DNA of 64,000 bases. Origin: Macrostomum lignano. Its lineage: Eukaryota. The stretch covers positions 620,001 through 684,000 of the forward strand of contig NIVC01000126.1 in NCBI GenBank assembly GCA_002269645.1, given 5' to 3'. The position numbers were made by a program, and so were the translations under genes. The notes below the pieces were generated by a model, which was not told where the DNA came from, ran no database searches, and saw only the letters and a program-made list of their open reading frames with translations. Below are positions 1 through 59,065 of this stretch, piece by piece (the first letter of the stretch is position 1; every line of letters begins with the position of its first letter).

Positions 1-520
1 CCAATCTACCTAATAATCTATCTACCTACATGTACCTACTAATCTACCTATCTTCCAATCCACCTACCAATCCAATCTATTTACCTACACTCAAGGGATC
101 CACCTACCTACCTACCTGGTAGTTAATTTTTCTTTCTAACATTTCTTAATCCTCATCCATCAAATCCCGTCCCTTCGAGTCCCAGCTCCCTGTTCCCCAT
201 CATTAATGCTAATTAACCACTACTCCACTCGCATCCTTTCCCACCCCGCTGGTAGGCAGCGGGGGTCCCGGACTTTCTCTCCTCTCCCATTCTCACCCCT
301 CCTCTCAAATCCTTCCTTTGTTTTCATAGCTTCATTTTTTGAGCCTATCTGCCTGTCTGTCTGTTTGCACAAGTGTCCTTTCCCATCCACTTTCCCCGCG
401 GGTGACTGACACAAACTCACTCACGGGATTTCCATAGCTACACTGAGGAAAAAAGTATGCATATCTCCTATATCGACTCCCTTTCTACCGTGACAGGACT
501 GGCTAGCCAAGAAGATCGGA

Positions 521-3500
521 ATGGTTGCTGCCCCCGTTGCTAGGCAGTTGCTATCCGTTGCAGCGGCAATTCTCATTGTCCAATTGTCCGCTGCATCCCC
601 GACAACGGGTATTGCAGCTTCATCAACGAAAAGCCATGGCTGCTCGGATGTATCTGGTAGAACTGCTCGTCTCAATTCAATGGTTTTAGCTAGCGAGTGT
701 AAGTGCCTCTGAGTATTGGCTGCTTGTGTCTGAGAATGTTCTCAATGTTTGTATTATGGACTCTGGAATGCTGTTTGAGTTCTATATGTTATTGCTTTTG
801 GGAGCATTGATGTTCTTATACAGTTATCTGAAATCTTGCAATGCCAGGTGCTATGATGCTCATTCTAGATAGTCATTCTAGATGGCCACTCCAGATCGTC
901 ACTTCAGATGGTCACTCTACGAGTAGATGGTCACTCCAGATGGTCACTCCAGATGGTCACTCCAGATGGTCACTCCAGATGGTCACTCCAGATGGTCACT
1001 CTAGATGGCCACTCCAGATGGTCACTCAAGTAGATGATCACTCCAGACAGTCACTCTAGTATCACTCCAGGTGGTCACAATAGATAGTCACACTAGATAG
1101 TTACTCAAGTAGATGGTGACTCGAGGTCGAGTAAATGATCACTCCAGACAGTCACTCTAGTATCACTCCAGGTGGTCACAATAGATAGTCACACCAGATA
1201 GTTACTCAAGTAGATGGTGACTCGAGGTCGAGCAAATGATCACTCCAGATCAGTCACTCCAGATCAATCACACCAAAGAGTCACTCCATCCGTTCCACCG
1301 TTAACTTTTGTTCGCATTCGCAGATGTGGGCGGTTCCCTGATGCCCTACACCAGAGCCACCGTGACCATAGACGGTGTGCCGGGACTGCACCAGGGCACA
1401 GGTCCAGAATTTGTCGGATCAACAGAGCAGCTGACTGGAGACAAAGCTGCAGGCTCCGATGATTTCCTACTGTTATTGAATCTCTCGGGTCTGAGATGCC
1501 TGTGCACTTACAGTTCTGATGGAGCTTTTAGCTACTGTTCCGAGTAAGTAGCGAGATGAAGGGACAGAGATGAAGGGACAGGAGATGAAGGGACAAAGAT
1601 AAAGGGACAAAGATGAAGGGACAAAGATAAAGGGACAAAGATGAAGGGACAAAGATAAAGGGACAAGAGAGGAAGGGACAAAGATAAAGAGACAGATAGG
1701 TGGGGACAGAGATGAAGGGACGAAATATAAAGGGACAAAGATAAAGGGACAAAGATAAAGGGACGAAAGATAATGAGACAAAAATGAAGGGACAAAGATG
1801 AAGGGACGAAATATAAAGAGACAGATAGGTGGGGACAAAGATGAAGGGACGAAAGATATAGGGACAGAGATGAAGGCACAGAGATGAAGGGACATGCTTT
1901 AACTTGCAAGAAATTGGACGAACTAAATTGCAGTTTGTCAACTCCGGAACCGCCTTGGCCAGCCGCTGACAATTGTCAGTGGCATCTGACAAGCGGCGGT
2001 CAGCTAGTTGAAACTGACATCTCTAACCAAAATTTCACCTGCTTGGATCGGGCGACAACGTCCGTGAGCAATCCGGATCAGTTTTGGCCGAAAGTTTCGT
2101 CGGTCAACAATGATTTTGGATTCGACGACACTCTGTTTATAAAGTACAGCTACTCCGCTGTGCAGTGTAAGATCGTCAATGAGTCTGTTTTGCTTCTATA
2201 TCGAGTCAGTAAGCTTGGAGATCTAGTGATTAGGGTTGGAGATCTAGTGATTAGGGTTGGAGATCTAGTCATTAGGGTTGGAGATCTAGTGATTAGGGTT
2301 GGAGATCTAGTGATTAGGGTTGGAGATCTAGTGATTAGGGTTGGAGATCTAGTCATTAGGGTTGGAGATCTAGTGATTAGGGTTGGAGATCTAGTCATTA
2401 GGGTTGGAGATCTAGTCATTAGGGTTGGAGATCTAGTGATTAGGGTTGGAGATCTAGTGATTAGGGTTGGAGATCTAGTGATTAGGGTTGGAGATCTAGT
2501 CATTAGGGTTGGAGATCTAGTGATTAGGGTTGGAGATCTAGTCATTAGGGTTGGAGATCTAGTGATTAGGGTTGGAGATCTAGTTATTAGGGTTGGAGAT
2601 CTAGTGATTAGGGTTGGAGATCTAGTGATTAGGGTTGGAGATCTAGTCATTAGGGTTGGAGATTTAGTCATTAGGGTTGGAGATCTAGTCAGTAAGTTTG
2701 GAGATCTAGTCATTAAGGTTGGAGATCTAGTCATTAAGATCAGAGATCTAGTCATTAAGGTTGGAGATCTAGTCATTGGGGTTGGAGATCTAGTCAGTAA
2801 GTTTGGAGATCTAGTCAGTAAGCTTGGAGATCTAGTGATTAGGGTTGGAGATCTAGTCATTAGGGTTGGAGATCTAGTGATTAGGGTTGGAGATCTAGTC
2901 ATTAGGGTTGGAGATCTAGTGATTAGGGTTGGAGATCTAGTGATTGGGGTTGGAGATCTAGTGATAGGGTTGGAGATCTAGTGATTAGGGTTGGAGATCT
3001 AGTCATTAGGGTTGGAGATCTAGTGATTAGGGTTGGAGATCTAGTCATTAGGGTTGGAGATCTAGTGATTAGGGTTGGAGATCTAGTCATTAGGGTTGGA
3101 GATCTAGTGATTAGGGTTGGAGATCTAGTGATTAGGGTTGGAGATCTAGTCATTAGGGTTGGAGATTTAGTCATTAGGGTTGGAGATCTAGTCAGTAAGT
3201 TTGGAGATCTAGTCATTAAGGTTGGAGATCTAGTCATTAAGATCAGAGATCTAGTCATTAAGGTTGGAGATCTAGTCATTGGGGTTGGAGATCTAGTCAG
3301 TAAGTTTGGAGATCTAGTCAGTAAGTTTGGAGATCTAGTCATTAAGGTTGGTGATCTAGTCATTGGGGTTGGAGATCTAGTCATTGGGGTTGGAGATCTA
3401 GTCATTGGGGTTGGAGATCTAGTCATTGGGGTTGGAGATCTAGTCATTGGGGTTGGAGATCTAGTCATTGGGGTTGGAGATCTAGTCATTGGGGTTGGAG

Positions 3501-6337
3501 ATCTAGTCATTGGGGTTGGAGATCTAGTCATTAGGGTTAGAGATCTAGTCATTGGGGTTGGAGAACTAGTCATTAAGGTTGGAGATCTAGTCATTGGGGT
3601 TGGAGATCTAGTCATTAGGGTTAGAGATCTAGTCATTGGGGTTGGAGATCTAGTCATTGGGGTTGGAGAACTAGTCATTGGGGTTGGAGATCTAGTCATT
3701 GGGGTTGGAGATCTAGTCATTGGGGTTGGAGATCTAGTCATTGGGGTTGGAGATCTAGTTAGTAAGAGCATAATTATTATATAATAAGTCTCATAAGTTA
3801 TCTCCGGCATCAAGTAAGTGAACGAAGACAGCTTGTCAGTACTAGCAAAGATTAATATATTTATCATTCATATTTTTCTACAGACTTCAATGGCAGCCGT
3901 CATTTGGCATTCCTAGCCGACGCTATCATCAATAGTCTATGGCCTGTCCGTATCAGCGTCCTGCGCCAACAGAGCGAAGGGGAGAGAGGCGGAAGCGGCG
4001 GCCAGGGGCGAGTGCTGATCTATAGGAAATATTTTGGCTGGTCAGGGCACTGCCTACACGAGTGTCGGGCTGTGTACCGGGCGGGCTCCAGCTACCGGAC
4101 TGTGGAGCAGAGTTGCACCGAGTAAGCGAAAGTGACAGATCGTGTGGAGAGAAGATGGAATTGATTAGAATTGAGTATAAGTGTGACAGATAGATTAGAA
4201 GTGAGAATAAGTGTGACAGATAGATTAGAAGTGAGAATATTACGTGAAAGACAGGTTAGAAGTGAGAATATTACGTGAAAGACAGATTAGAGTGAGAATA
4301 AGTGTGACAGACAGATTAGAAGTGAGAATATTACGTGAAAGACAGATTAGAGTGAGAATAAGTGTGAAAGACAGATTAGGAGTGAGAATAAGTGTGACAG
4401 ACAGATTAGGAGTGAGAATAAGTGTGACAGACAGATTAGGAGTGAGTATAAATGTGACAGATAGATTAGGAGTGAGAATAAGTGTGACAGACAGATTAGG
4501 AGTGAGAATAAGTGTGAAAGACAGATTAGAGTGAGAATAAGTGTGAAAGACAGATTAGGAGTGAGAATAAGTGTGACAGACAGATTAGGAGTGAGAATAA
4601 GTGTGACAGACATATTAGGAGTGAGAATAAGTGTGACAGACATATTAGGAGTGAGAATAAGTGTGACAGACAGATTAGGAGTGAGAATAAGTGTGAAAGA
4701 CAGATTAGGAGTGAGAATAAGTGTGACAGACAGATTAGAAGTGAGAATATTACGTGAAAGACAGATTAGAGTGAGAATAAGTGTGAAAGACAGATTAGGA
4801 GTGAGAATAAGTGTGACAGACAGATTAGGAGTGAGAATAAGTGTGACAGACATATTAGGAGTGAGAATAAGTGTGACAGACAGATTAGGAGTGAGAATAA
4901 GTGTGAAAGACAGATTAGGAGTGAGAATAAGTGTGACAGACAGATTAGGAGTGAGAATAAGTGTGACAGACAGATTAGAATTGAGAATAAGTGTGACAGA
5001 CAGATTAGGAGTGAGTATAAATGTGACAGATAGATTAGGAGTGAGAATAAGTGTGACAGACAGATTAGGAGTGAGAATAAGTGTGAAAGACAGATTAGGA
5101 GTGAGTATACGTGTGACAGACAGATTAGAAGTGAGAATAAGTGTGACAGACAGATTAGGAGTGAGAATAAGTGTGACAGAGAGATTAGGAGTGAGTATAA
5201 ATGTGACAGATAGATTAGGAGTGAGAATAAGTGTGACAGACAGATTAGGAGTGAGAATAAGTGACAGGCAGATTGGGAGTAAGAACCGGCGTATGTATCT
5301 GATGCACATATTCACAGACTTCAACAACTGACACCTGTCTAATTCAGGCTGGTCAGCGCTCAGACTGAAGCTCATACCGCATCTGAGTGCGTCTGGACAT
5401 TCGCAGTGGACTGCAAGCCGGTGCTGGTGAGGGCTGACAATAGAAGCTTGGCCTGTACGAACCGGCAGAATAAAGAAGATGAGTCTACTGATTTAGCTGG
5501 GACCAGGTGAGTTCTGTGGGAGATGAGTGAGTGAAGGGGTGAGATTAGAGAAGGGAGAGGGGGATTAGAGAGGGGAGAGGGGTGAGATTAGAGAGGGGTG
5601 AGGGAGTGAGATTAGAGAAGGGAGAGGGATGGAAATTAGAGAAGGGAGCTCAGGGAGTGAGATTAGAGAAGGAGGACAAAGGGAGATCAGAGAAGGGAGA
5701 GGTAAGAGAGGGAGATTAGAGAAGGTAGAGGTGAGAGAGGGAGAGGTAAGAGAGGGAGATTAGAGAATGGAGAGGTGAGAAATTGAGATTAGAGAAGGAA
5801 GAGAGGAGAGAGATTAGAGAAGGGAGAGGTGAGAGAGGGAGATTAGAGAAGGGAGAGGTGAGAGAGGGAGATTAGAGAAGTGAGAGTTGAGAAGGGAGAT
5901 TAGAGAAGTGAGAGGTGAGAGAGGGAGATTAGAAAACGGAGAGGTGAGAGAGGGAGATTAGACAGGAGAATGCACACCCTGCAGATTCTCAGAGAGCACA
6001 TTGCACACTTCTTTCGTTAAACCGCAAATTCTCAAATTTAAAAACAAACTTCAGCCCTGCAAATCCTACAACTTCAACCGCGTACATGGAACCTGAGACT
6101 TCAACTGCGAGCATTGAGGCCACTGCTCACTGGCCAGACGACAATGTCACCGACTTTGTCACACCTTCACCGAGTTCTGATTGGTCGAACGAGACTCAAT
6201 GCTACATTAAGCTGAGACTTTTTGGCGGTGGAACAGCGCTGTCCCCAAACTTGCAGCTTCTTTTCATCAGCAAAATCTTAGTTGCCATGCTTGCTGTGTA
6301 CGAATATAACTTGTTTATTGATTTTGCTTTCATTTGA
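521..6337 (+). CDS. Orphan secreted/surface protein (~436 aa): signal peptide, two Cys-patterned modules, S/T-rich stalk, hydrophobic C-terminal tail (GPI-like)
   Basis: Exons 521-698, 1324-1543, 1934-2166, 3884-4121, 5348-5506, 6055-6337. All introns are GT..AG and the phases (1,2,1,2,2) join into one stop-free frame. N-terminus MVAAPVARQLLSVAAAILIVQLSAA; C-terminus GGGTALSPNLQLLFISKILVAMLAV... No family recognised. Confidence 0.75.
865..1285. repeat. Degenerate 13-bp minisatellite (AGATGGTCACTCC)n, intron 1 of orphan gene
   Basis: Direct reading of tandem units. Confidence 0.85.
1553..1893. repeat. 14-bp purine-rich minisatellite (AGATGAAGGGACAA/G)n, intron 2
   Basis: Tandem units starting just after the GTAAGT donor at 1544. 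Confidence 0.9.
2205..3765. repeat. 21-bp minisatellite (GGAGATCTAGTCATTAGGGTT)n, intron 3
   Basis: ~70 units; source of the spurious VGDLVIR and TRSPTLI ORFs. Confidence 0.95.
4150..5265. repeat. 30-bp minisatellite (AGTGAGAATAAGTGTGACAGACAGATTAGG)n, intron 4
   Basis: Tandem units. Confidence 0.95.
5525..5968. repeat. GA-rich ~29-bp minisatellite, intron 5
   Basis: Units like GAGATTAGAGAAGGGAGAGGTGAGAGAGG. Confidence 0.85.
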
Positions 6338-6602
6338 GCACCTGGCCATTTCTAGGAAACTTTAACGTTGTGCGCAGTCTTTCATCCTGAAATACCATTG
6401 ATTGAGGCTTCTCAAAAATGTTATGATTGTGTAACATCGTAAAATATATTTAGTCTACAAGTGTTTTGGTGAAATTCCATATGCCCTAAAAACTGCTTCC
6501 CAAAAATTAGATCTGTTACACCTATTTTTCCTGACTCGCTTAACTTTTCTCCGAATTTGAATCCATGCGAAAATTTGGAAAGTTTTAACTTTCGTTTAAT
6601 TA

Positions 6603-6608
6603 AATAAA
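6603..6608 (+). terminator. Putative polyadenylation signal of the orphan gene
   Basis: AATAAA repeated in an AT-rich tract ~270 nt after the stop at 6337. Confidence 0.45.
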
Positions 6609-6804
6609 CAAATAAAACAAATAATTTAAATAATTAAATAAACAAACTGCGCAATTATTTGAATGTTTTTACAGTAAAATTTATCATTAATGATTTAAAC
6701 AGACGAGCTACTATAAGTAGAAATAAACAAAAAACTTACTTTAGGTGCATTTTTAAAAGGTGCTCATTTTAGATGGTTTTCGATGATTCTGGCTAATGTC
6801 AGAT

Positions 6805-7055
6805 GATGCCGGATGATGCTGGGTGATGCTGGGTGATGCTGGATCATGACGGATGATGCCGGATGATGCTGGGTGATGCTGGATTATGACGGATGATGCT
6901 GGGTGATGCCGGATGATGCTTCGTGATGCTGGATGATGCCGGATGATGCTGGGTGATGCCGGATAATGCTGGGTGATGCCAGATGATGCTGGTTGATGCT
7001 GAATGATGCTGTGTAATGCTGAATGATGCTGGGTGATGCTGGGTGATGCTAGATA
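6805..7055. repeat. 10-bp minisatellite (GATGCTGGGT/GATGCCGGAT)n
   Basis: Tandem units. Confidence 0.85.
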
Positions 7056-20592: not shown

Positions 20593-20702
20593 GTTGCTGG
20601 AGGGAGGGAAAGGAGCTGCATGGAACCTCTTGGGACCCTGGATGACACTTGCAAAAATTCATGATAGAAGATCGGAGAGAGTGGGCGATAAAGTGGAGTT
20701 AA

Positions 20703-23700
20703 GGACTCTGGAAGTTGGAGTGTAGCTTAATGAAGAACTCTGGAAGCTGGAGTGTAGCTTAATGAAGAACTCTGGAAGCTGGAGTGTAGCTTAATGAAGA
20801 ACTCTGGAAGCTAGAGTGTAGCTTAATGAAGGACTCTGGAAGCTGGAGTGTAGCTTAATGAAGAACTCTGGAAGCTGGAGTGTAGCTTAATGAAGAACTC
20901 TGGAAGTTGGAGTGTAGCTTAATGAAGAACTCTGGAAGCTGGAGTGTAGCTTAATGAAGGACTCTGGAAGCTGGAGTGTAGCTTAATGAAGAACTCTGGA
21001 AGCTGGAGTGTAGCTTAATGAAGAACTCTGGAAGCTGGAGTGTAGCTTAATGAAGAACTCTGGAAGCTGGAGTGTAGCTTAATGAAGGACTCTGGAAGCT
21101 GGAGTGTAGCTTAATGAAGAACTCTGGAAGCTGGAGTGTAGCTTAATGAAGAACTCTGGAAGCTGGAGTGTAGCTTAATGAAGAACTCTGGAAGCTGGAG
21201 TGTAGCTTATGGAGAACTCTGGAAGTTGGAAAGTAGCTTAATGAAGAACTATGGAAGCTGGAGTGTAGCTTAATGAAGGACTCTGGAAGATGGAGTGTAG
21301 CTTAATGAAGAACTCTGGAAGCTGGAGTGTAGCCTAATGAAGAACTCTGGAAGCTGGAGTGTAGCTTAATGAAGAACTCTGGAAGCTGGAGTGTAGCTTA
21401 ATGAAGAACTCTGGAAGCTGGAGTGTAGCTTAATGAAGAACTCTGGAAGCTGGAGTGTAGCTTAATGAAGGACTCTGGAAGCTGGAGTGTAGCTTAATGA
21501 AGAACTCTGGAAGCTGGAGTGTAGCTTAATGAAGAACTCTGGAAGTTGGAGTGTAGCTTAATGAAGAACTCTGGAAGCTGGAGTGTAGCTTAATGAAGGA
21601 CTCTGGAAGCTGGAGTGTAGCTTAATGAAGGACTCTGGAAGCTGGAGTGTAGCTTAATGAAGGACTCTGGAAGCTGGAGTGTAGCTTAATGAAGAACTCT
21701 GGAAGCTGGAGTAAAGCTTAATGAAGGACTCTGGAAGCTGGAGTGTAGCTTAATGAAGAACTCTGGAAGCTGGAGTGTAGCTTAATGAAGAACTCTGGAA
21801 GTTGGAGTGTAGCTTAATGAAGAACTATGGAAGCTGGAGTGTAGCTTAATGAAGGACTCTGGAAGCTGGAGTGTAGCCTAATGAAGAACTCTGGAAGCTG
21901 GAGTGTAGCCTAATGAAGAACTCTGGAAGCTGGAGTGTAGCTTAATGAAGAACTCTGGAAGCTGGAGTGTAGCTTAATGAAGAACTCTGGAAGCTGGAGT
22001 GTAGCTTAATGAAGAACTCTGGAAGCTGGAGTGTAGCTTAATGAAGAACTCTGGAAGCTGGAGTGTAGCCTAATGAAGAACTCTGGAAGCTGGAGTGTAG
22101 CCTAATGAAGAACTCTGGAAGCTGGAGTGTAGCCTAATGAAGAACTCTGGAAGCTGGAGTGTAGCTTAATGAAGAACTCTGGAAGCTGGAGTGTAGCTTA
22201 ATGAAGAACACTGGAAGCTAGAGTGTAGCTTAATGAAGGACTCTGGAAGCTGGAGTGTAGCTTAATGAAGGACTCTGGAAGCTGGAGTGTAGCTTAATGA
22301 AGGACTCTGGAAGCTGGAGTGTAGCTTAATGAAGAACTCTGGAAGCTGGAGTGTAGCTTAATGAAGAACTCTGGAAGCTGGAGTGTAGCCTAATGAAGAA
22401 CTCTGGAAGCTGAAGTGTAGCCTAATGAAGAACTCTGGAAGCTGGAGTGTAGCCTAATGAAGACTATGAAGTTGGAGTGTAGCTTAATGAAGGACTCTGG
22501 AAGCTGGAGTGTAGCTTAATGAAGAACACTGGAAGCTAGAGTGTAGCTTAATGAAGGACTCTGGAAGCTGGAGTGTAGCTTAATGAAGGACTCTGGAAGC
22601 TAGAGTGTAGCTTAATGAAGGACTCTGGAAGCTGGAGTGTAGCTTAATGAAGAACTCTGGAAGTTGGAGTGTAGCTTAATGAAGAACTCTGGAAGCTGGA
22701 GTGTAGCTTAATGAAGGACTCTGGAAGCTGGAGTGTAGCTTAATGAAGGACTCTGGAAGCTGGAGTGTAGCTTAATGAAGGACTCTGGAAGCTGGAGTGT
22801 AGCTTAATGAAGAACTCTGGAAGCTGGAGTAAAGCTTAATGAAGGACTCTGGAAGCTGGAGTGTAGCTTAATGAAGAACTCTGGAAGCTGGAGTGTAGCT
22901 TAATGAAGAACTCTGGAAGTTGGAGTGTAGCTTAATGAAGAACTATGGAAGCTGGAGTGTAGCTTAATGAAGGACTCTGGAAGCTGAAGTGTAGCTTAAT
23001 GAAGAACCCTGGAAGCTGGAGTGTAGCCTAATGAAGAACTCTGGAAGCTGGAGTGTACCCTAATGAAGACTATGAAGTTGGAGTGTAGCTTAATGAAGAA
23101 CTCTGGAAGCTGGAGTGTAGCCTAATGAAGAACTCTGGAAGCTGGAGTGTAGCTTAATGAAGAACTCTGGAAGCTGGAGTGTAGCCTAATGAAGAACTCT
23201 GGAAGCTGGAGTGTAGCCTAATGAAGAACTCTGGAAGCTGGAGTGTAGCTTAATGAAGAACTCTGGAAGCTGGAGTGTAGCTTAATGAAGAACTCTGGAA
23301 GCTGGAGTGTAGCCTAATGAAGAACTCTGGAAGCTGGAGTGTAGCTTAATGAAGAACTCTGGAAGCTGGAGTGTAGCTTAATGAAGGACTCTGGAAGCTA
23401 GAGTGTAGCTTAATGAAGAACTCTGGAAGCTAGAGTGTAGCCTAATGAAGGACTCTGGAAGCTAGAGTGTAGCTTAATGAAGAACTCTGGAAGCTGGAGG
23501 GTAGCTTAATGAATAACTCTGGAAGCTGGAGTGTAGCCTAATGAAGAACCCTGGAAGCTGGAGTGTAGCCTAATGAAGAACTCTGGAAGCTGGAGTGTAG
23601 CTTAATGAAGAACTCTGGAAGCTGGAGTGTAGCTTAATGAAGAACTCTGGAAGCTGGAGTGTAGCCTAATGAAGAACTCTGGAAGCTGGAGTGTAGCTTA

Positions 23701-26700
23701 ATGAAGAACTCTGGAAGCTGGAGTGTAGCTTAATGAAGAACTCTGGAAGCTGGAGTGTAGCTTAATGAAGAACTCTGGAAGCTGGAGTGTAGCTTAATGA
23801 AGAACTCTGGAAGCTGGAGTGTAGCCTAATGAAGAACTCTGGAAGCTGGAGTGTAGCTTAATGAAGAACTCTGGAAGCTGGAGGGTAGCTTAATGAATAA
23901 CTCTGGAAGCTGGAGTGTAGCCTAATGAAGAACTCTGGAAGCTGGAGTGTAGCCTAATGAAGAACTCTGGAAGCTGGAGTGTAGCCTAATGAAGAACTCT
24001 GGAAGCTGGAGTGTAGCTTAATGAAGGACTCTGGAAGCTAGAGTGTAGCTTAATGAAGAACTCTGGAAGCTAGAGTGTAGCCTAATGAAGAACTCTGGAA
24101 GCTAGAGTGTAGCTTAATGAAGGACTCTGGAAGCTGGAGGGTAGCTTAATGAATAACTCTGGAAGCTGGAGTGTAGCCTAATGAAGAACCCTGGAAGCTG
24201 GAGTGTAGCCTAATGAAGAACTCTGGAAGCTGGAGTGTAGCTTAATGAAGAACTCTGGAAGCTGGAGTGTAGCTTAATGAAGAACTCTGGAAGCTGGAGT
24301 GTAGCTTAATGAAGAACTCTGGAAGCTGGAGTGTAGCTTAATGAAGAACTCTGGAAGCTGGAGTGTAGCCTAATGAAGAACTCTGGAAGCTGGAGTGTAG
24401 CCTAATGAAGAACTCTGGAAGCTGGAGTGTAGCCTAATGAAGAACTCTGGAAGCTGGAGTGTAGCTTAATGAAGAACTCTGGAAGCTGGAGTGTAGCTTA
24501 ATGAAGAACTCTGGAAGCTGGAGTGTAGCTTAATGAAGAACCCTGGAAGCTGGAGTGTAGCTTAATGAAGAACTCTGGAAGCTGGAGTGTAGCTTAATGA
24601 AGAACTCTGGAAGCTGGAGTGTAGCTTAATGAAGAACCCTGGAAGCTGGAGTGTAGCTTAATGAAGAACTCTGGAAGCTGGAGTGTAGCTTAATGAAGAA
24701 CTCTGGAAGCTGGAGTGTAGCCTAATGAAGAACTCTGGAAGCTGGAGTGTACCCTAATGAAGACTATGAAGTTGGAGTGTAGCTTAATGAAGAACTCTGG
24801 AAGCTGGAGTGTAGCCTAATGAAGAACTCTGGAAGCTGGAGTGTAGCTTAATGAAGAACTCTGGAAGCTGGAGTGTAGCCTAATGAAGAACTCTGGAAGC
24901 TGGAGTGTACCCTAATGAAGACTATGAAGTTGGAGTGTAGCTTAATGAAGAACTCTGGAAGCTGGAGTGTAGCTTAATGAAGAACCCTGGAAGCTGGAGT
25001 GTAGCCTAATGAAGAACTCTGGAAGCTGGAGTGTAGCCTAATGAAGAACTCTGGAAGCTGGAGTGTAGCTTAATGAAGAACTCTGGAAGCTGGAGGGTAG
25101 CTTAATGAATAACTCTGGAAGCTGGAGTGTAGCCTAATGAAGAACTCTGGAAGCTGGAGTGTAGCTTAATGAAGAACTCTGGAAGCTGGAGTGTAGCTTA
25201 ATGAAGAACTCTGGAAGCTGGAGTGTAGCTTAATGAAGAACTCTGGAAGCTGGAGTGTAGCTTAATGAAGAACTCTGGAAGCTGGAGTGTAGCCTAATGA
25301 AGAACTCTGGAAGCTGGAGTGTAGCCTAATGAAGAACTCTGGAAGCTGGAGTGTAGCCTAATGAAGAACTCTGGAAGCTGGAGTGTAGCTTAATGAAGAA
25401 CTCTGGAAGCTGGAGTGTAGCTTAATGAAGAACTCTGGAAGCTGGAGTGTACCCTAATGAAGACTATGAAGTTGGAGTGTAGCTTAATGAAGAACTCTGG
25501 AAGCTGGAGTGTAGCCTAATGAAGAACTCTGGAAGCTGGAGTGTAGCTTAATGAAGAACTCTGGAAGCTGGAGTGTAGCCTAATGAAGAACTCTGGAAGC
25601 TGGAGTGTAGCCTAATGAAGAACTCTGGAAGCTGGAGTGTAGCTTAATGAAGAACTCTGGAAGCTGGAGGGTAGCTTAATGAATAACTCTGGAAGCTGGA
25701 GTGTAGCCTAATGAAGAACTCTGGAAGCTGGAGTGTAGCCTAATGAAGAACTCTGGAAGCTAGAGTGTAGCCTAATGAAGAACTCTGGAAGCTGGAGTGT
25801 AGCTTAATGAAGGACTCTGGAAGCTAGAGTGTAGCTTAATGAAGAACTCTGGAAGCTAGAGTGTAGCCTAATGAAGAACTCTGGAAGCTAGAGTGTAGCT
25901 TAATGAAGAACTCTGGAAGCTGGAGGGTAGCTTAATGAATAACTCTTGAAGCTGGAGTGTAGCTTAATGAAGAACCCTGGAAGCTGGAGTGTAGCCTAAT
26001 GAAGAACTCTGGAAGCTGGAGTGTAGCTTAATGAAGAACTCTGGAAGCTGGAGTGTAGCTTAATGAAGAACTCTGGAAGCTTGAGTGTAGCTTAATGAAG
26101 AACTCTGGAAGCTGGAGTGTAGCCTAATGAAGAACTCTGGAAGCTGGAGTGTAGCCTAATGAAGAACTCTGGAAGCTGGAGTGTAGCCTAATGAAGAACT
26201 CTGGAAGCTGGAGTGTAGCTTAATGAAGAACTCTGGAAGCTGGAGTGTAGCTTAATGAAGAACTCTGGAAGCTGGAGTGTAGCTTAATGAAGAACCTGGA
26301 AGCTGGAGTGTAGCTTAATGAAGAACTCTGGAAGCTGGAGTGTAGCTTAATGAAGAACTCTGGAAGCTGGAGTGTAGCTTAATGAAGAACCTGGAAGCTG
26401 GAGTGTAGCTTAATGAAGAACTCTGGAAGCTGGAGTGTAGCTTAATGAAGAACTCTGGAAGCTGGAGTGTAGCCTAATGAAGAACTCTGGAAGCTGGAGT
26501 GTAGCCTAATGAAGACTATGAAGTGGAGTGTAGCTTAATGAAGAACTCTGGAAGCTGGAGTGTAGCTAATGAAGAACTCTGGAAGCTGGAGTGTAGCTTA
26601 ATGAAGAACTCTGGAAGCTGGAGTGTAGCTAATGAAGAACTCTGGAAGCTGGAGTGTAGCCTAATGAAGAACTCTGGAAGCTGGAGTGTAGCTTAATGAA

Positions 26701-28809
26701 GAACTCTGGAAGCTGGAGTGTAGCTTAATGAAGAACCTGGAAGCTGGAGTGTAGCCTAATGAAGAACTCTGGAAGCTGGAGTGTAGCTAATGAAGAACTC
26801 TGGAAGCTGGAGTGTAGCTTAATGAAGAACTCTGGAAGCTGGAGGGTAGCTTAATGAATAACTCTGGAAGCTGGAGTGTAGCCTAATGAAGAACTCTGGA
26901 AGCTGGAGTGTAGCTTAATGAAGAACTCTGGAAGCTGGAGTGTAGCTTAATGAAGAACTCTGGAAGCTGGAGTGTAGCTTAATGAAGAACTCTGGAAGCT
27001 GGAGTGTAGCTTAATGAAGAACTCTGGAAGCTGGAGTGTAGCTTAATGAAGAACTCTGGAAGCTGGAGTGTAGCTAATGAAGAACTCTGGAAGCTGGAGT
27101 GTAGCTTAATGAAGAACTCTGGAAGCTGGAGTGTAGCTTAATGAAGAACTCTGGAAGCTGGAGTGTAGCTTAATGAAGAACTCTGAAGCTGGAGTGTAGC
27201 TTAATGAAGAACTCTGGAAGCTGGAGTGTAGCCTAATGAAGAACTCTGGAAGCTGGAGTGTAGCCTAATGAAGAACTCTGGAAGCTGGAGTGTAGCTAAT
27301 GAAGAACTCTGGAAGCTGGAGTGTAGCTTAATGAAGGACTCTGGAAGCTGGAGTGTAGCTTAATGAAGAACTCTGGAAGCTGGAGTGTAGCTTAATGAAG
27401 AACCCTGGAAGCTGGAGTGTAGCCTAATGAAGAACTCTGGAAGCTGGAGTGTACCCTAATGAAGACTATGAAGTTGGAGTGTAGCTTAATGAAGAACTCT
27501 GGAAGCTGGAGTGTAGCCTAATGAAGAACTCTGGAAGCTGGAGTGTAGCCTAATGAAGAACTCTGGAAGCTGGAGTGTAGCTTAATGAAGAACTCTGGAA
27601 GCTGGAGTGTAGCCTAATGAAGAACTCTGGAAGCTGGAGTGTAGCTTAATGAAGAACTCTGGAAGCTGGAGTGTAGCTTAATGAAGAACCCTGGAAGCTG
27701 GAGTGTAGCCTAATGAAGAACTCTGGAAGCTGGAGTGTAGCTTAATGAAGAACTCTGGAAGCTGGAGTGTAGCCTAATGAAGAACTCTGGAAGCTGGAGT
27801 GTAGCTTAATGAAGAACTCTGGAAGCTGGAGTGTAGCTTAATGAAGGACTCTGGAAGCTAGAGTGTAGCTTAATGAAGAACTCTGGAAGCTAGAGTGTAG
27901 CTAATGAAGACTCTGGAAGCTAGAGTGTAGCTTAATGAAGAACTCTGGAAGCTGGAGTGTAGCTTAATGAACTCTGGAAGCTGGAGTGTAGCCTAATGAA
28001 GAACCTGGAAGCTGGAGTGTAGCTAATGAAGAACTCTGGAAGCTGGAGTGTAGCTTAATGAAGAACTCTGGAAGCTGGAGTGTAGCTAATGAAGAACTCT
28101 GGAAGCTGGAGTGTAGCCTAATGAAGAACTCTGGAAGCTGGAGTGTAGCTTAATGAAGAACTCTGGAAGCTGGAGTGTAGCTTAATGAAGAACTCTGGAA
28201 GCTGGAGTGTAGCTTAATGAAGAACTCTGGAAGCTGGAGTGTAGCTAATGAAGAACTCTGGAAGCTGGAGTGTAGCTTAATGAAGAACCTGGAAGCTGGA
28301 GTGTAGCCTAATGAAGAACTCTGGAAGCTGGAGGTAGCCTAATGAAGAACTCTGGAAGCTGGAGTGTAGCCTAATGAAGAACTCTGGAAGCTGGAGTGTA
28401 GCCTAATGAAGAACTCTGGAAGCTGGAGTGTAGCTTAATGAAGGACTCTGGAAGCTAGAGTGTAGCTTAATGAAGAACTCTGGAAGCTAGGTGAGCTAAT
28501 GAAGAACTCTGGAAGCTGGAGTGTAGCTTAATGAAGAACTCTGGAAGCTGGAGGGTAGCTTAATGAAGAACTCTGGAAGCTGGAGTGTAGCCTAATGAAG
28601 AACCTGGAAGCTGGAGTGTAGCCTAATGAAGAACTCTGGTGGAGTGTAGCTTAATGAAACTCTGGAAGCTGGAGTGTAGCTTAATGAAGAACTCTGGAAG
28701 CTGGAGTGTAGCTAATGAAGAACTCTGGAAGCTGGAGTGTAGCTTAATGAAGAACTCTGGAAGCTGGAGTGTAGCTTAATGAAGAACTCTGGAAGCTGGA
28801 GTGTAGCTT
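20703..28809. repeat. 8.1-kb 32-bp satellite (CTCTGGAAGCTGGAGTGTAGCTTAATGAAGAA)n, ~250 units, running into the gap
   Basis: Direct reading; TAG/TAA/TGA in each unit closes all plus-strand frames. Confidence 0.98.
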
Positions 28810-29603
28810 NNNNNNNNNNNNNNNNNNNNNNNNNNNNNNNNNNNNNNNNNNNNNNNNNNNNNNNNNNNNNNNNNNNNNNNNNNNNNNNNNNNNNNNNNNN
28901 NNNNNNNNNNNNNNNNNNNNNNNNNNNNNNNNNNNNNNNNNNNNNNNNNNNNNNNNNNNNNNNNNNNNNNNNNNNNNNNNNNNNNNNNNNNNNNNNNNNN
29001 NNNNNNNNNNNNNNNNNNNNNNNNNNNNNNNNNNNNNNNNNNNNNNNNNNNNNNNNNNNNNNNNNNNNNNNNNNNNNNNNNNNNNNNNNNNNNNNNNNNN
29101 NNNNNNNNNNNNNNNNNNNNNNNNNNNNNNNNNNNNNNNNNNNNNNNNNNNNNNNNNNNNNNNNNNNNNNNNNNNNNNNNNNNNNNNNNNNNNNNNNNNN
29201 NNNNNNNNNNNNNNNNNNNNNNNNNNNNNNNNNNNNNNNNNNNNNNNNNNNNNNNNNNNNNNNNNNNNNNNNNNNNNNNNNNNNNNNNNNNNNNNNNNNN
29301 NNNNNNNNNNNNNNNNNNNNNNNNNNNNNNNNNNNNNNNNNNNNNNNNNNNNNNNNNNNNNNNNNNNNNNNNNNNNNNNNNNNNNNNNNNNNNNNNNNNN
29401 NNNNNNNNNNNNNNNNNNNNNNNNNNNNNNNNNNNNNNNNNNNNNNNNNNNNNNNNNNNNNNNNNNNNNNNNNNNNNNNNNNNNNNNNNNNNNNNNNNNN
29501 NNNNNNNNNNNNNNNNNNNNNNNNNNNNNNNNNNNNNNNNNNNNNNNNNNNNNNNNNNNNNNNNNNNNNNNNNNNNNNNNNNNNNNNNNNNNNNNNNNNN
29601 NNN
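28810..29603. other. Assembly gap (794 N)
   Basis: Run of N. Confidence 0.99.
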
Positions 29604-32600
29604 CCGGCAACTGCTGCGACTCCTGCCTGCAAATTTGAATCGCAAGTCCGTGCTCAGCGTGAACTGGCTGTCGGGCTCCTTTGTCGAGGTGCTGATCAAT
29701 GGTCCGCTAAGCGTGTCCGTGACTCAGCTGCCCGTGGTGCCAGCTTTCACGATTAAGCTGCAGCCGAGAATGACGCGGAGGAAAACACTGGGATGCTGAG
29801 TTCCGCGTTGCTGACAAAGTCATAAAATGCAGCCTAACGATTGACTCAAGGGTGCTTGAGCTTCGAGTTCAGACACCATTTGAACTGGTGAGGAAACTGG
29901 GAGGCAAGGTGGCTTTCAATAGCGAGCCACCGATGAAACTGAGTGCTGAGGCCAGCTTTGAACTCAATGACTATCGCTATGCTGCATCAGTAAATGCCGA
30001 TGTTAAGAAGGTGGCGCGCTATCCTCAAGGCTTGTTCAGCTGCAAGATTCAGACACCGCATCGCGCCATCAAAAGCGCCAAATTCCTGATTGAGCACCGG
30101 AGATCGGACGAGCTCTGGAGCTCCGAATTTGCTGCTCGGATCAACGAGAAGGAGCTCAAAATTGATGGCAACGCAACCAACGAGGCTGTCAGACTTCGCA
30201 TTGCTCTGCCAATTGAAGGATACGAGAAGGTTGGCTTCAAAGTTCTGACAGACCAGTCGGAGTCGGAGCCGCGAGTGCAGGCGCTGGTGCACATGCCGCA
30301 CGGCCGCTTCGGCAGAGTGTCTACCGTTGGCAGTTACAATGGACCGGCTGCCATGTCCACTCGAGTGTCAGTTGAGACCTCATTCCGCGGCTTCAGAAAT
30401 GCTGAGATTAGAGTGAAAAACCAGATGCGACAGCGCATCCTGGAGCACACGTCGAGCATGAGGGTCAATGGAGAGCAGTGGCACGACATCAAGATCAGAG
30501 CCGGCATTCAAAGTGGACAGATCGTCGTCAATCGCACACAACCGGTGGTAATTGGCTATAAAGTGACCATGACTGGTGAAATGATCAACTCCGAGATCAA
30601 AGTGAACATCGGTGACTGGGTCCCATTCCACCTGCGAGGCCAGGTGCAAGCCAGCGGCGAAGGAGTTAAAAGCAGATCGTTCCTCTCCCTGCGCACCCCG
30701 CACAGAACAGTGCAGCTGGACAGAGAGATCAGCCTCTTCTCGGGCCGGCTTGGCTACAAGCTGTCGTTCACGCCAAATCAGGGAGTTGTCCGGCCGCTCT
30801 CATTCGAGGCCTCTCTAGAAAACAAAGGAGTCTATTCTGAGGTGGATGTGGAGTCGAAACTGGCGCTTAGCACACCGGCCAGGCGAATCGAGTCGACCAT
30901 TGGCTACCAGAAGAAGACTGGAGAGTTCCGCGCTTCAGCTACCGTCAACTGGGATGCGAACGACGCCGAGTCAAACAAAATTATGGGAGTCTCAGTCCAG
31001 GGTCGCTACACGCCTGGAAGACAATTGGCTGGCACCGCCGAGCTGAGGTTTATTGACCCGAAGCCGTACTCAGTCTCAATCAGCACCGAAAGGGGAGTGG
31101 GAAAAACGTTGCACTCCACTGACATCAGGTTGGACATTACGAAGAAAATTCAGGACACAGTTGTACTTAAGTGGTCGGCGGTTCAAAAAGCTCCAGAGAG
31201 CACCCAACTCTCAGCCAGCCTGTCCCAGGCAAGCAGCAACGTCGACTTTAGGATCAATGGCGAGATGACGACGACATCGGAGGTGCGGAGCGGCAACTTG
31301 TCCATCCACTACACCGATGCTGGGGGCCGGCCCACCGTGATGCAATCTGTGGTTGAGCTCAGCTCCAGCGCGCTTCGCGTTGACCTGGTCCTGCCAACTA
31401 AACGATGCAGCCTCGAGCTAAAGAAGACAGTGAAACTGGGAGCAACAACTTACACCGCGAAGACTCACGGACAGAAACTAGAAGTCCGCGTCTCCAGTCA
31501 GCCAGATCTTCAACTAATCTACGAGCCCAGGGAGAATGACCGATTTTCAGCTGCCCTCGGATACGCCGACGACTGGCACCTAAGGGCGGACGTGCACCGA
31601 GTGACTAACCAGGTGAAGATGCAGCAGCTGCTGGCTCAGGTCCAGCTAAAGTCCCGGCACCTCATGAAAGTGAAGCTGCACTGGAATCCCACAAGCAGCC
31701 TGCTCCGCTATGCCGCTCTGCGCGAAAGCCTGCCAGCGCTGCTCAACGACGGCCGAGCCCTGATGGCGTCTATGAAGGCCTCCTGCGTGTACGAAATCCT
31801 GGCGCAGGTTCGCAACGATCTCATCCTGCCCGACCTATCGAGCGCCGCTAACAGTGTAGCTCAGGAGCTGGAACCCCTGCGTCGGGACCTCGGCTACATG
31901 AACGCTCAGTTCCGAGACATGTACATCCGAAACGAATTCTACAGCCGCGACATTTACGAAGCCGTCAGAGGAGTCACTCGCGCCGTGGTATCCAGAATCG
32001 TGGGAGCCGCACAGAGCGCGATGGACGCCTACTCAGCCTACGTCCACCCGCATGTCGTCAGTGGAGCCAACCGCATCGCCAGCCACGCCAGCCGTTGCTA
32101 TGGACACGCCAATCGAGTCTACGCCGTCTATCAACACCACCGGGACCGTCTCTACCGCAAGGTGAACGGGCACGCGCTGCGCTTCATCAACAGCGCCGTG
32201 GACGGCATTCGACCCGCTCTGGACGCGGCGCACAGCGGCTACCAGCGATTTGCCGCGGTCAACCCGCTTAGCGGCAGCGCGGCAACCCTTGGCGACCTCC
32301 GTATGCGCGTGGCGCGCTCGGTCAGCGAGGTCAACTACGAGGCATTTAACTTGCTGCACTCCGACATCCGCGAGCAGGTGCTGACAGCCCACCGGTCCAT
32401 CGAGGCCAGCATTGGCCGAGCTTCGGACAGCGCAGCCGTGATTATCACCTCCGCGAAGGCACGGGTCAGGCACCACGTGAATCGCATGGTAGGCGACGGA
32501 CTGCTCAGTTCCATGGTTTCTGGCGCGTACACGCAGTCCAGATGGTTCCTGGACCACTTCAACATCGAGCAGAATTTGAAAGACTTCGCCAGAGACAACT

Positions 32601-38534: not shown

Positions 38535-40027
38535 AAGTGTCAGACGAATCTAAAAGTGTCAGACGAATCCTAGAAATGTCAAACGAATCCTAGAAGTGTC
38601 GGATAAATCTTGACAGAAGTGTCAGACGAATCCTAAAAGTGTTAAATGAATCCGTAAAGTGTCAGGTAAACCTTGACAGTAGTGTCAGACGAATTCTAGT
38701 AGTGTCAGAAGTGTCAGACGAATCACAGTAGTGTCAGACGAATCCCAGTAGTGTCAGACGAATCCTAGAAGTGTCAGACGAGTCTCAGTAGTGTCAGACG
38801 AATCCTAGAAGTGTCAGATGAATCCTAGAAGTGTCAGATGAATGCTAGAAGTGTCAGACGAATCCCAGTAGTGTCAGACGAATCCCAGTAGTGTCAGACG
38901 AATCCCTGTAGTGTCAGACGAATCCCAGTAGTGTCAGGCGAATCCTATAAGTGTCAGACGAATCCTAGAAGTGTCAGACGAATCCCAGTAGTGTCAGACG
39001 AATCATAGAAGTGTCAGATGAATCCTAGAAGTGTCAGATGAATCCTAGAAGTGTCAGACGAGTCCCAGTAGTGTCAGACGAATCCTAGAAGTGTCAAATG
39101 AATCCCAGTAGTGTCAGACGAATCCCAGTAGTGTCAGACGAATCCCAGTAGTGTCAGGCGAATCCTATAAGTGTCAGACGAATCCTAGAAGAGTCGGGTA
39201 AACCTTGACAGTAGTTTCAGACGAATTTTAGTAGTGTCAGACGAATCCCAGTAGTGTCAGACGAATCCTAGAAGTGTCAGACGAATCCCAGTAGTGTCAG
39301 ATGAATCCTAGAAGTGTCAGACGAGTCCCAGTAGTGTCAGACGAATCCTAGAAGTGTCAGACGAATCCCAGTAGTGTCAGACGAATCCCAGTAGTGTCAG
39401 ACGAATCCCAGTAGTGTCAGGCGAATCCTATAAGTGTCAGACGAATCCTAGAAGTGTCGGGTAAACCTTGACAGTAGTTTCAGACGAATTTTAGTAGTGT
39501 CAGACGAATCCCAGTAGTGTCAGACGAATCCCTGTAGTGTCAGACGAATCCTAGAAGTGTCAGACGAATCCCAGTAGTGTCAGATGAATCCTAGAAGTGT
39601 CAGACGAATCCCAGTAGTGTCAGACGAATCCTAGAAGTGTCAGACGAATCCCAGTAGTGTCAGACGAATCCCAGTAGTGTCAGACGAATCCCAGTAGTGT
39701 CAGACGAATCCCTGTAGTGTCAGACGAATCCCAGTAGTGTCAGACGAATCCCAGTAGTGTCAGGCGAATCCTATAAGTGTCAGACGAATCCTAGAAGTGT
39801 CAGACGAATCCCAGTAGTGTCAGACGAATCCCAGTAGTGTCAGACGAATCCCAGTAGTGTCAGACGAATCCCTGTAGTGTCAGACGAATCCCAGTAGTGT
39901 CAGACGAATCCCAGTAGTGTCAGGCGAATCCTATAAGTTTCAGACGAATCCTAGAAGTGTCAGACGAATCCCAGTAGTGTCAGACGAATCCTAGAAGTGT
40001 CAAATGAATCCCAGTAGTGTCAGACGA
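38535..40027. repeat. 20-bp minisatellite (GTGTCAGACGAATCCCAGTA/CTAGAA)n
   Basis: ~70 units ending ~30 nt before the neurensin acceptor. Confidence 0.95.
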
Positions 40028-40085
40028 CCCTCAATGCAACTCCAACCTCCTCGCGCAGGCCCAGCAGCAGCCTCGGCAGTCAGGA

Positions 40086-58644: not shown

Positions 58645-58699
58645 TGAGCTGCTGGTTGATGCGGACAGGTGGGACCAGGTGATGCTACAGCTGCCTATC

Positions 58700-59065
58700 C
58701 TAATTCCGCTGTCTACACTACACATCCGCTGTCTACCCTACAAATCCACTGTCTACCCTACAAATCCGCTGTCTACACTACACATCCGCTGTCTACCCTA
58801 CAAATCCGCTGTCTACCCTCCAAATTCGCTGTCTACCCTATAAATCCGCTTTCTACCCTACAAATCCGCTGTCTACCCTACAAATCCACTGTCTACCCTA
58901 CAAATCCGCTGTCTACCCTACAAATCCGCTGTCTACCCTACAAATCCACTGTCTACCCTACAAATCCGCTGTCTACCCTACAAATCCGCTGTCTACCCTA
59001 TAAATCCACCGTCTCCTTATAAACCTGCTGTCGTCTCTATAAAAAATCCGGTGTCTACCCTAAAA
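58700..59065. repeat. 20-bp minisatellite (CTACAAATCCGCTGTCTACC)n in a probable 5'UTR intron of TXNDC9
   Basis: Tandem units between a minus-strand GTGAGG donor at 59079 and a CAG acceptor just before the ATG. Confidence 0.85.

What the first reader, a model, noticed from the sequence alone, without database searches (positions are those of the whole stretch)
521..6337. Orphan surface protein built from a duplicated two-exon Cys module (possible cystatin-like fold)
Seen: exons 2+3 and exons 4+5 open with the same intron phases (1 then 2) and share the exact spacing C-x15-C-x-W with a further C 21 residues after the second C (CSDLSTPEPPWPAADNCQW...NFTC vs CTELVSAQTEAHTASECVW...RSLAC). Both modules begin with a split Tyr codon and carry an N-glycosylation sequon just before the last Cys, although the rest of the sequence has diverged. 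A signal peptide, S/T stalk and hydrophobic tail flank them. Inference: this is an ancient internal domain duplication in a GPI-anchored or membrane-tethered protein. The four-Cys spacing recalls type-2 cystatin/cathelin domains (about C-x9-C-x13-C-x19-C), but no QxVxG motif is clear. The ORF track misses this gene almost entirely.
Basis: partly seen in the sequence, partly recalled or inferred. Interest (0 to 1): 0.7.

Follow-up and report, generated by a model that had tools for sequence, protein, structure and literature searches.

The report
Flatworm-only surface glycoprotein, duplicated Cys module
This is a real six-exon gene of the flatworm Macrostomum lignano, already in GenBank as a hypothetical protein, that encodes a probably GPI-anchored surface glycoprotein with two ancient copies of a small cysteine module; it has no relatives outside this species in the databases, no support for a cystatin fold, and only a weak resemblance to CUB domains.

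Summary
Six GT-AG exons (521-698, 1324-1543, 1934-2166, 3884-4121, 5348-5506, 6055-6337) splice into a 436-aa ORF. It is 98-99% identical to M. lignano hypothetical proteins PAA93624.1 and PAA90150.1. Intron phases are 1,2,1,2,2. C-x15-C-x-W-x19-C occurs twice (0 of 50,000 shuffles).

Internal duplication is supported. hhalign of module A against module B gives P about 0.001-0.002, and no column or block shuffle reached the observed score. The phase-2 intron falls in the same aligned codon in both modules. A 38%-identical paralogue (PAA82898.1) has the same six-exon and phase layout and both modules.

"Orphan" is supported. An exhaustive phmmer search of 1.84 billion representatives and a profile search found only M. 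lignano proteins. Pfam and PDB sequence searches found nothing.

The cystatin idea is not supported: no QxVxG, wrong Cys spacing, hhalign P 0.05 and 0.75. The nearest known motif is the P-x-x-[YW]-P...C-x-W start of CUB domains. UniProt auto-names some copies "CUB domain-containing". The Pfam CUB model does not hit, and my own CUB profile gives only 26% probability.

The fold is unresolved because both AlphaFold runs failed (pLDDT 27 and 33). The signal peptide, S/T stalk and C-terminal hydrophobic tail fit a GPI-anchored protein. Modest interest.

The parts
521..698 (+). Exon 1: start codon, signal peptide (aa 1-~26, nt 521-598), first Cys (C41). Ends in phase 1 (GAG T|gtaagt).
   Evidence: Identical exon in the NCBI copies L002 and L003.
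1324..1543 (+). Exon 2 (first exon of module A): Y60...C118-L-C120...C131-S-(D). Ends in phase 2 (GA|gtaagt).
   Evidence: Poorly conserved in the paralogue except for its C-terminal Cys part.
1934..2166 (+). Exon 3 (second exon of module A): LSTPEPPWPAADN-C147-Q-W...NFT-C169...TLFIKYSYSAVQ. Donor is CAGT|gtaaga. The unconserved alternative donor at 2208 would add 14 aa.
   Evidence: This is the region with the weak co-linear match to a CUB profile.
1497..2042 (+). Module A Cys core (C118 to C169), interrupted by intron 2.
   Evidence: Aligned to module B by Smith-Waterman and hhalign.
3884..4121 (+). Exon 4 (first exon of module B): Y211-FNGS...LWPVRISVL...YFGWSGH-C267-LHE-C271...S-C288-T-(E). 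Ends in phase 2 (GA|gtaagc).
   Evidence: The best-conserved block between the paralogues.
5348..5506 (+). Exon 5 (second exon of module B): LVSAQTEAHTASE-C304-V-W-TFAVD-C312...NRS-LA-C326, then the start of the acidic and S/T-rich stalk.
4051..5456 (+). Module B Cys core (C267 to C326), interrupted by intron 4.
6055..6337 (+). Exon 6: S/T/P-rich stalk with sequons NVT and NET; a possible GPI omega region G-G-G (aa 400-402); the hydrophobic C-terminal tail aa 408-436 (nt 6248-6334); stop codon TGA at 6335-6337.
   Evidence: AATAAA signals from 6603.
855..1266 (.). Intron 1 minisatellite (13-mer GATGGTCACTCCA and derivatives).
   Evidence: Same unit in L002 and L003.
1554..1894 (.). Intron 2 minisatellite (14-mer AGATGAAGGGACAA).
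2200..3759 (.). Intron 3 minisatellite (21-mer, 74 copies).
   Evidence: L003 has 37 copies and L002 has none.
4163..5285 (.). Intron 4 minisatellite (30-mer, 37 copies).
5541..5962 (.). Intron 5 minisatellite (29/57-mer, purine-rich).

Best explanation
A genuine protein-coding gene of Macrostomum lignano, one of at least three near-identical copies plus one old paralogue. It encodes a secreted, N- and probably O-glycosylated protein held at the cell surface, most likely by a GPI anchor.

The ectodomain carries two copies of a disulfide-bonded module with the core C...C-x(15-22)-C-x-W-x19-C and a sequon before the last Cys. The copies arose by tandem duplication of an exon pair before the two paralogue lineages split. 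A mucin-like S/T stalk lifts the modules off the membrane.

The family is found only in this species in current databases and evolves fast.

The fold is unresolved. It looks beta-rich, and its N-terminal motif resembles the start of a CUB domain. The most likely role is therefore extracellular binding or recognition at the cell surface, not protease inhibition.

Shown: the gene structure, the duplication signal, the restricted distribution and the sequence features of targeting.
Inferred: the GPI anchoring, the glycosylation, the disulfide pairing and the binding function.
For: - Gene model. Clean GT-AG splicing gives a 436-aa ORF. It is 98-99% identical to NCBI models, which come from a genome-guided RNA-seq transcriptome annotation (PMC5730564). 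The same six exons and phases occur in L002, L003 and the 38%-identical paralogue L001. All copies keep intact ORFs.
- Duplication. Smith-Waterman score 43 against a shuffle mean of 27, p = 0.005-0.008. hhalign P = 0.0018 and 0.001 over 45 columns. No column shuffle (0/300) or block shuffle (0/200) reached the observed score, and the reversed control scored 10.2 against 26.3. The phase-2 intron lies in the same aligned codon in both modules (A codon 74 aligns with B codon 80, the alignment offset being 6). The distance from the phase-1 intron to the phase-2 intron is 74 vs 80 codons here and 70 vs 72 in the paralogue. The motif was seen in 0 of 50,000 shuffles. Both modules are present in the paralogue.
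- Targeting. Hydrophobic N-terminus at 9-25, a hydrophobic tail that ends the protein, small residues GGG about 8 residues before the tail, and a stalk that is 37% S/T/P. The paralogue keeps the same features with unrelated sequence.
- Restriction. phmmer against 1.84e9 representatives gave 6 hits, all M. lignano. The profile search gave the same result.
- Fast evolution. dN/dS is 0.56-0.78 between recent copies.
Against: - No structural model. AlphaFold gave pLDDT 27 and 33, so the superposition of the two modules could not be tested.
- Exon 2 and exon 4 are not detectably similar.
- The signal peptide and GPI calls are heuristic. No SignalP or NetGPI was available.
- No expression, localisation or functional data were found. 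Literature searches for the gene ids returned nothing.
- dN/dS near 0.6-0.8 between recent copies is also compatible with relaxed constraint after polyploidisation.
- The databases may hold few other macrostomid sequences, so "restricted to M. lignano" may really mean restricted to the genus or order.
Confidence: 0.6

Rival explanations
1. It is a highly divergent CUB-domain protein. Module A (about aa 127-220) is a degenerate CUB beta-sandwich. Module B is a second, partly eroded CUB-derived unit. The family is then not a new domain but a fast-evolving CUB offshoot.
For: - UniProt automatic names call several copies "CUB domain-containing protein".
- In both modules, the best local matches to a CUB HMM built from 8 PDB CUB domains fall exactly on the P-x-x-W-P...C-x-W and the C-V-W motifs.
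- hhalign of module A against that CUB profile is co-linear over 81 columns (CUB positions 8-97). It gives P = 7e-4 and 26% probability. No column shuffle reached the score (0/300), 2 of 200 block shuffles did, and the reversed control scored 15.8 against 26.3.
- The low-confidence AlphaFold models are almost all beta.
Against: - The Pfam CUB model gives no hit even at E <= 10, for the whole proteins or for the isolated modules.
- The custom CUB HMM scores about 0.8 bits.
- The C1-C2 spacing is 15, not about 26. The fourth CUB Cys is missing. In the hhalign alignment, Cys169 sits about 4 columns away from CUB Cys3.
- Module B against CUB gives P = 0.045 and stops after about 40 residues, where the stalk begins.
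- Other fragments of the same gene are auto-named "Ricin B-type lectin" or "Homeobox", so these names are unreliable.
Confidence: 0.25
2. The two modules are not homologous. The shared Cys spacing and intron phases are coincidence or convergence in a Cys-rich secreted protein.
For: - Sequence identity in the aligned core is only about 20% and is dominated by Cys and Trp.
- Exon 2 against exon 4 shows no similarity.
- The x15 spacing is x22 in the paralogue's module B.
- hhalign probability is only 15-21%.
Against: - No shuffle control of either kind reaches the observed profile score.
- The motif was seen in 0 of 50,000 shuffles.
- The intron falls in the identical aligned codon and phase. I estimate roughly 1 in 400 for that by chance, independent of the sequence score.
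- Both features are conserved in a paralogue whose dS against this gene is saturated.
Confidence: 0.12
3. One reading: the modules are cystatin/cathelin-like domains, making this a membrane-tethered cysteine-protease inhibitor.
For: The only support is a loose resemblance in having several Cys in the C-terminal part of a ~100-residue module. hhalign of module A against cystatin C gives P = 0.05.
Against: - No QxVxG in any copy.
- Spacing of x15/x21 against x9/x13/x19 in cystatin C (sequence confirmed against 1g96).
- Module B gives P = 0.75.
- No Pfam cystatin hit at E <= 10.
- The low-confidence models lack the long cystatin helix.
Confidence: 0.02
4. It is not a functional gene: an annotation artefact or a decaying duplicate.
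For: dN/dS is 0.56-0.78 between recent copies and 1.36 in the stalk and tail. UniProt holds several aberrant, frame-shifted or exon-skipping fragment models of it.
Against: - Four loci keep intact ORFs with identical exon-intron structure and canonical splice sites, while the introns change length several-fold.
- The core blocks are strongly conserved between paralogues, with dN/dS about 0.2 (dS saturated).
Confidence: 0.02

Closest known systems
CUB domain (Pfam PF00431; e.g. cubilin, neuropilin, PCPE-1, C1r/C1s)
   Same: It is an extracellular module that opens with a Cys, then P-x-x-[YW]-P-x(3-4)-C-x-W-x-[ILF], followed by alternating hydrophobic (beta-like) stretches and a hydrophobic "l.v.F/Y.s" strand near the end. 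Module A aligns co-linearly with CUB positions 8-97.
   Different: There is no significant HMM match. The first loop is shorter (15 vs ~26 residues). The fourth Cys is missing, and extra Cys lie upstream (C118/C120, C267/C271). Module B is only about half the length of a CUB domain before the stalk starts.
GPI-anchored Cys-rich, mucin-stalked surface glycoproteins of flatworms and other metazoans (general class)
   Same: Signal peptide, disulfide-rich ectodomain, S/T-rich stalk with sequons, and a C-terminal hydrophobic signal with no cytoplasmic tail. It is lineage-restricted and fast-evolving.
   Different: The Cys pattern matches no described family (Ly6/uPAR, CUB, sushi and others gave no Pfam hit). 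The anchoring has not been demonstrated.
Type-2 cystatins / cathelin domain
   Same: Small secreted disulfide-bonded modules that can occur in tandem.
   Different: No QxVxG, different Cys spacing, no profile similarity, and predicted to be all-beta rather than helix plus sheet.

Membership tests
CUB domain (PF00431 / PROSITE PS01180) | Significant match to a CUB sequence profile | tested here: not met
   Pfam-A gave no CUB hit at E <= 10 for the full proteins or the isolated modules. An HMM built from 8 PDB CUB domains scored 0.8 bits over 17 residues.
CUB domain (PF00431 / PROSITE PS01180) | Profile-profile similarity across the ~110-residue domain | tested here: inconclusive
   Module A by hhalign: 81 columns, P = 7e-4, probability 26%. 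No column shuffle reached the score (0/300), but 2 of 200 block shuffles did. Module B: P = 0.045, probability 1%.
CUB domain (PF00431 / PROSITE PS01180) | Four conserved Cys (C1-C2, C3-C4) with spacings of about 26, 26 and 20, and C-x-W after C2 | tested here: not met
   C-x-W is present in both modules. However C1-C2 is 15 residues (22 in the paralogue's module B), C2-C3 is 21, and there is no C4.
CUB domain (PF00431 / PROSITE PS01180) | Beta-sandwich (jelly-roll) fold | tested here: inconclusive
   AlphaFold2 gave mean pLDDT 27.1 and 32.8. Foldseek against the PDB gave nothing at E <= 0.001.
Type-2 cystatin / cathelin | QxVxG hairpin motif | tested here: not met
   A regex search found none in the window product, P0001, P0009 or P0015.
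Type-2 cystatin / cathelin | Cys spacing of about C-x9-C-x13-C-x19-C, and a profile match | tested here: not met
   Observed spacing is x15/x21. hhalign against cystatin C (1g96) gives P = 0.05 for module A and 0.75 for module B. No Pfam cystatin hit.
Ricin B-type lectin (beta-trefoil; UniProt auto-name of some fragments) | Match to the Ricin_B_lectin profile, or three QxW repeats | tested here: not met
   No Pfam hit at E <= 10. There is a single QFW at residue 182 in this gene and none in the paralogue.
GPI-anchored surface protein | N-terminal signal peptide, plus a C-terminal hydrophobic segment that ends the protein and is preceded by small residues and a short spacer | tested here: met
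   By Kyte-Doolittle profile, 9-25 and 408-436 are the main hydrophobic segments, with a weaker one at 107-121. GGG at 400-402 lies 8 residues before the tail. There are no residues after the tail. The same layout occurs in the paralogue. This is heuristic only.
GPI-anchored surface protein | Actual GPI attachment (dedicated predictor, PI-PLC release) | not testable with these tools
   No NetGPI, PredGPI or experimental data were available.
Internally duplicated (two-module) protein | Significant module-to-module similarity and shared intron position and phase | tested here: met
   hhalign P = 0.001-0.002. No column shuffle (0/300) or block shuffle (0/200) reached the observed score. The intron is in the same aligned codon, phase 2, in this gene and in the paralogue.
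Internally duplicated (two-module) protein | The two modules superimpose structurally | tested here: inconclusive
   Both AlphaFold runs gave unusable models.

The most novel reading that the evidence does not exclude
The family (Mlig016975 / Mlig014724 / Mlig003854) may define a previously undescribed extracellular disulfide-bonded domain that is unrelated to CUB. It would have arisen within macrostomid flatworms, been duplicated in tandem inside the gene, and be displayed on a GPI-anchored mucin stalk. That would make it a lineage-specific surface recognition molecule.
Probability: 0.35. Interest if true: 0.4.

Novelty: new member of a known kind. Interest (0 to 1): 0.25.

Why it matters
Lineage-restricted surface glycoproteins are common in flatworms. 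They are candidates for cell-cell recognition, epidermal or gut surface functions and reproductive interactions in a regeneration model organism.

This one gives a clean small example of exon-pair duplication that sequence alone barely reveals but intron position and phase preserve. It also shows that the public automatic names for this gene (CUB, ricin B lectin, homeobox) are unreliable.

It does not open a long-standing question. Its value lies mainly in annotation and as a candidate for expression and RNAi screens.

Tried and rejected
- AlphaFold2 on the full-length NCBI copy with a 3-row alignment (pLDDT 27.1) and on the 219-aa core of the paralogue with 7 rows (pLDDT 32.8). Both are unusable because the family has only two effective sequences.
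- Foldseek of the second model against the PDB: nothing at E <= 0.001, and the top hits are a mixed bag. I did not run the viral library.
- The spliced window protein could not be submitted for structure prediction, so P0001 stood in for it.
- Pfam on the whole proteins and isolated modules: no domain.
- PDB sequence searches with the single protein and with a profile: only chance hits at E about 1.
- Cystatin hypothesis: rejected.
- Ricin B lectin auto-name: rejected.
- My first model used the donor at 2208 and gave 450 aa. I rejected it in favour of 2166, which the NCBI models and the paralogue support and because the extension is closed by a stop in copy L002.
- tblastn of the protein against the rest of the window: no second copy.
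- All three word-indexed homology searches and the exhaustive representative search found only M. lignano proteins.
- A look-up of P0006 by exact sequence found no contig. Its full-length form P0015 did.
- Literature searches for the three gene ids: no papers.
- Rfam and tRNA scans of the window: nothing.
Full report
**What the window is.** The best protein matches are all from the free-living flatworm Macrostomum lignano. The window is packed with minisatellites (72 TRF rows). That fits the published genome, in which simple and tandem repeats make up 15% (PMC5730564). It carries ordinary metazoan genes: a VWD/C8 protein, a neurensin-like protein, CLPTM1, a TXNDC9/phosducin-like protein and SID-1. 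It also has one assembly gap at 28810-29603.

**Checking the observation.** I read 1-7000 and spliced the exons.
- With donors and acceptors at 698/1324, 1543/1934, 2166/3884, 4121/5348 and 5506/6055, all GT-AG, the ORF runs from ATG 521 to TGA 6335-6337. It encodes 436 aa, with exon start phases 0,1,2,1,2,2.
- My first attempt used a second in-frame donor at 2208 and gave 450 aa. The shorter form is the one in NCBI (PAA93624.1, 436 aa, 426/436 identical; PAA90150.1, 433/436 identical) and the one that matches the paralogue.
- The 14-aa extension is closed by a stop in copy L002.
- Chance does not give this. A repeated three-Cys spacing with W at +2 in both copies occurred in 0 of 50,000 shuffles.

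**Is the gene real?** Four loci were compared: the window, L003 (PAA93624.1), L002 (PAA58531.1) and L001 (PAA82898.1, the paralogue).
- All have six exons with the same phases and intact ORFs, although intron lengths differ several-fold.
- The NCBI models stem from a genome-guided RNA-seq transcriptome annotation (PMC5730564).
- dS is 0.013-0.053 among the three close copies, in line with the assembly redundancy described for this genome.
- Among those copies dN/dS is 0.56-0.78. Against the old paralogue it is about 0.2, with dS saturated.
- The gene is therefore coding, conserved in its core and evolving fast.

**Is the duplication real?**
- Pairwise Smith-Waterman of exons 2+3 against exons 4+5 scores 43, against a shuffle mean of 27 (p about 0.005-0.008). 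The similarity is confined to about 68 residues from C118/C271 to just past C169/C326.
- Exon 2 and exon 4 are otherwise dissimilar, with z below 0.
- Using alignments that include the paralogue, hhalign gives P = 0.0018 (A as query) and 0.001 (B as query) over 45 columns, at 15-21% probability.
- No column-shuffled control (0/300) or block-shuffled control (0/200) reached the observed score. The reversed alignment scored 10.2 against 26.3.
- Independently of sequence, the phase-2 intron lies in exactly the aligned codon (A codon 74, B codon 80, alignment offset 6).
- The distance from the phase-1 intron to the phase-2 intron is 74 vs 80 codons here and 70 vs 72 in the paralogue.
- Both modules exist in the paralogue, so the duplication predates a split at which synonymous sites are saturated.
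- I conclude that an exon-pair duplication is likely, at about 0.8. Only the Cys core retains recognisable similarity.

**Orphan status.**
- An exhaustive phmmer search of 1.84 billion representative proteins returned six hits, all M. lignano.
- The three word-indexed searches, including a profile of both paralogue groups, returned the same set.
- Pfam and PDB sequence searches gave nothing.
- The family comprises at least two paralogue groups: Mlig016975/Mlig014724 and Mlig003854.

**What fold?** The cystatin proposal fails every test I could run.
- There is no QxVxG.
- The Cys spacing differs from cystatin C, whose sequence I confirmed against 1g96.
- hhalign gives P = 0.05 for module A and 0.75 for module B.
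- Pfam finds no cystatin.

A different lead came from UniProt's automatic names, "CUB domain-containing protein" for several copies. I took eight real CUB domains from PDB alignments (cubilin, PCPE-1 and neuropilin-2) and built a profile.
- With HMMER, the only matches fall on PEPPWPAADNCQWHLTSG and ASECVWTFAVD. They score about 0 bits.
- With hhalign, module A aligns co-linearly to CUB positions 8-97 at P = 7e-4 and 26% probability. No column shuffle beat it (0/300), but 2 of 200 block shuffles did. Module B gives P = 0.045.
- The first loop is too short, and the fourth CUB Cys is missing.
- The same gene's fragments are elsewhere auto-named "Ricin B-type lectin" and "Homeobox", so those labels carry little weight.

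Two AlphaFold runs failed (pLDDT 27 and 33, mostly beta in both), and Foldseek on the second model was uninformative. My verdict is that CUB-like is the closest known resemblance, that membership is not established, and that the fold is unknown.

**How it most likely works.**
- The N-terminal hydrophobic stretch (9-25) is followed by AAS|P.
- There are six N-x-S/T sequons.
- The acidic and S/T/P-rich stretch at 331-400 looks like a stalk.
- The hydrophobic tail (408-436) ends the protein and is preceded by GGG and an 8-residue spacer.
- This is the classic layout of a GPI-anchored, glycosylated surface protein. The paralogue keeps the layout with unrelated sequence.
- Each half has an even number of Cys (six, if C41 is counted with module A). 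That is consistent with three disulfides per half, though this is inference.
- I therefore read it as a membrane-tethered, stalked pair of small disulfide-bonded binding modules on the cell surface. The ligand and the tissue are unknown.

**Novelty and score.** The gene is already deposited as a hypothetical protein. Its internal duplication, architecture and family limits are not described in any paper I could find. It is a new, uncharacterised member of a familiar class: lineage-specific, GPI-type, Cys-rich surface glycoproteins. Interest is modest, at 0.25. The most novel reading still open is a new macrostomid-specific extracellular domain, with probability about 0.35.

Noticed in passing
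window 699-6054 (introns of the gene); L003 3001-7889; L002 3001-8761; L001 10001-15914: Each of the five introns is mostly one minisatellite: a 13-mer, a 14-mer, a 21-mer x74, a 30-mer x37 and a 29-mer. The same units sit in the same introns of the two other near-identical copies, but copy numbers differ widely. The 21-mer has 74, 37 and 0 copies. Intron lengths are 625/390/1717/1226/548 vs 878/686/941/509/564 vs 828/1047/254/1222/1114. The old paralogue has unrelated minisatellites in three of its five introns.
   Followed up: partly
window 20701-29603: An 8.1-kb satellite of a 32-bp unit (about 255 copies, 95% matches) runs straight into the only assembly gap (N run at 28810-29603). The true array is probably longer.
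   Followed up: no
window 29852-34600 (+): An uninterrupted 1582-aa ORF with a von Willebrand type D domain and a C8 domain. It starts right after the assembly gap, so its 5' part is probably missing.
   Followed up: partly
window 60906-63996 (-): A SID-1 (dsRNA channel) homologue in two long exons, 62566-63996 and 60906-61718. They are separated by an intron filled with a 30-bp minisatellite at 61754-62536.
   Followed up: partly
window 40017-40823 (+), 49789-50463 (-), 57949-58725 (-): Further neighbouring genes: a neurensin/TMEM74-like ORF just below the Pfam threshold, a CLPTM1 exon, and a thioredoxin/phosducin-like (TXNDC9-type) ORF.
   Followed up: partly
window 2167-2208; L003 5196-5237; L002 5507-5550: An in-frame alternative donor 42 nt downstream of the exon-3 donor would insert CKIVNESVLLLYRV, which adds one Cys and one sequon. 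The extension stays open in the window and in L003 but contains a stop in L002, so it is probably not functional.
   Followed up: yes
L001 10158 (intron 1 of paralogue Mlig003854g3): The first intron of the paralogue uses a GC-AG splice pair (TTGAAG|gcaagt). All introns of the window gene are GT-AG.
   Followed up: no
UniRef entries for this gene (P0003-P0008, P0011-P0014): Public fragment models of this one gene are frame-shifted, exon-skipping or chimeric. They carry conflicting automatic names: CUB, Ricin B-type lectin, Homeobox and uncharacterized.
   Followed up: partly
CDS of window gene vs L002/L003 copies: dN/dS between recent copies is 0.56-0.78 overall. In the window vs L002 comparison it is 0.12 in the signal-peptide exon region, 0.74 in the core and 1.36 in the stalk and tail. 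The counts are small, at 14-16 synonymous differences.
   Followed up: partly
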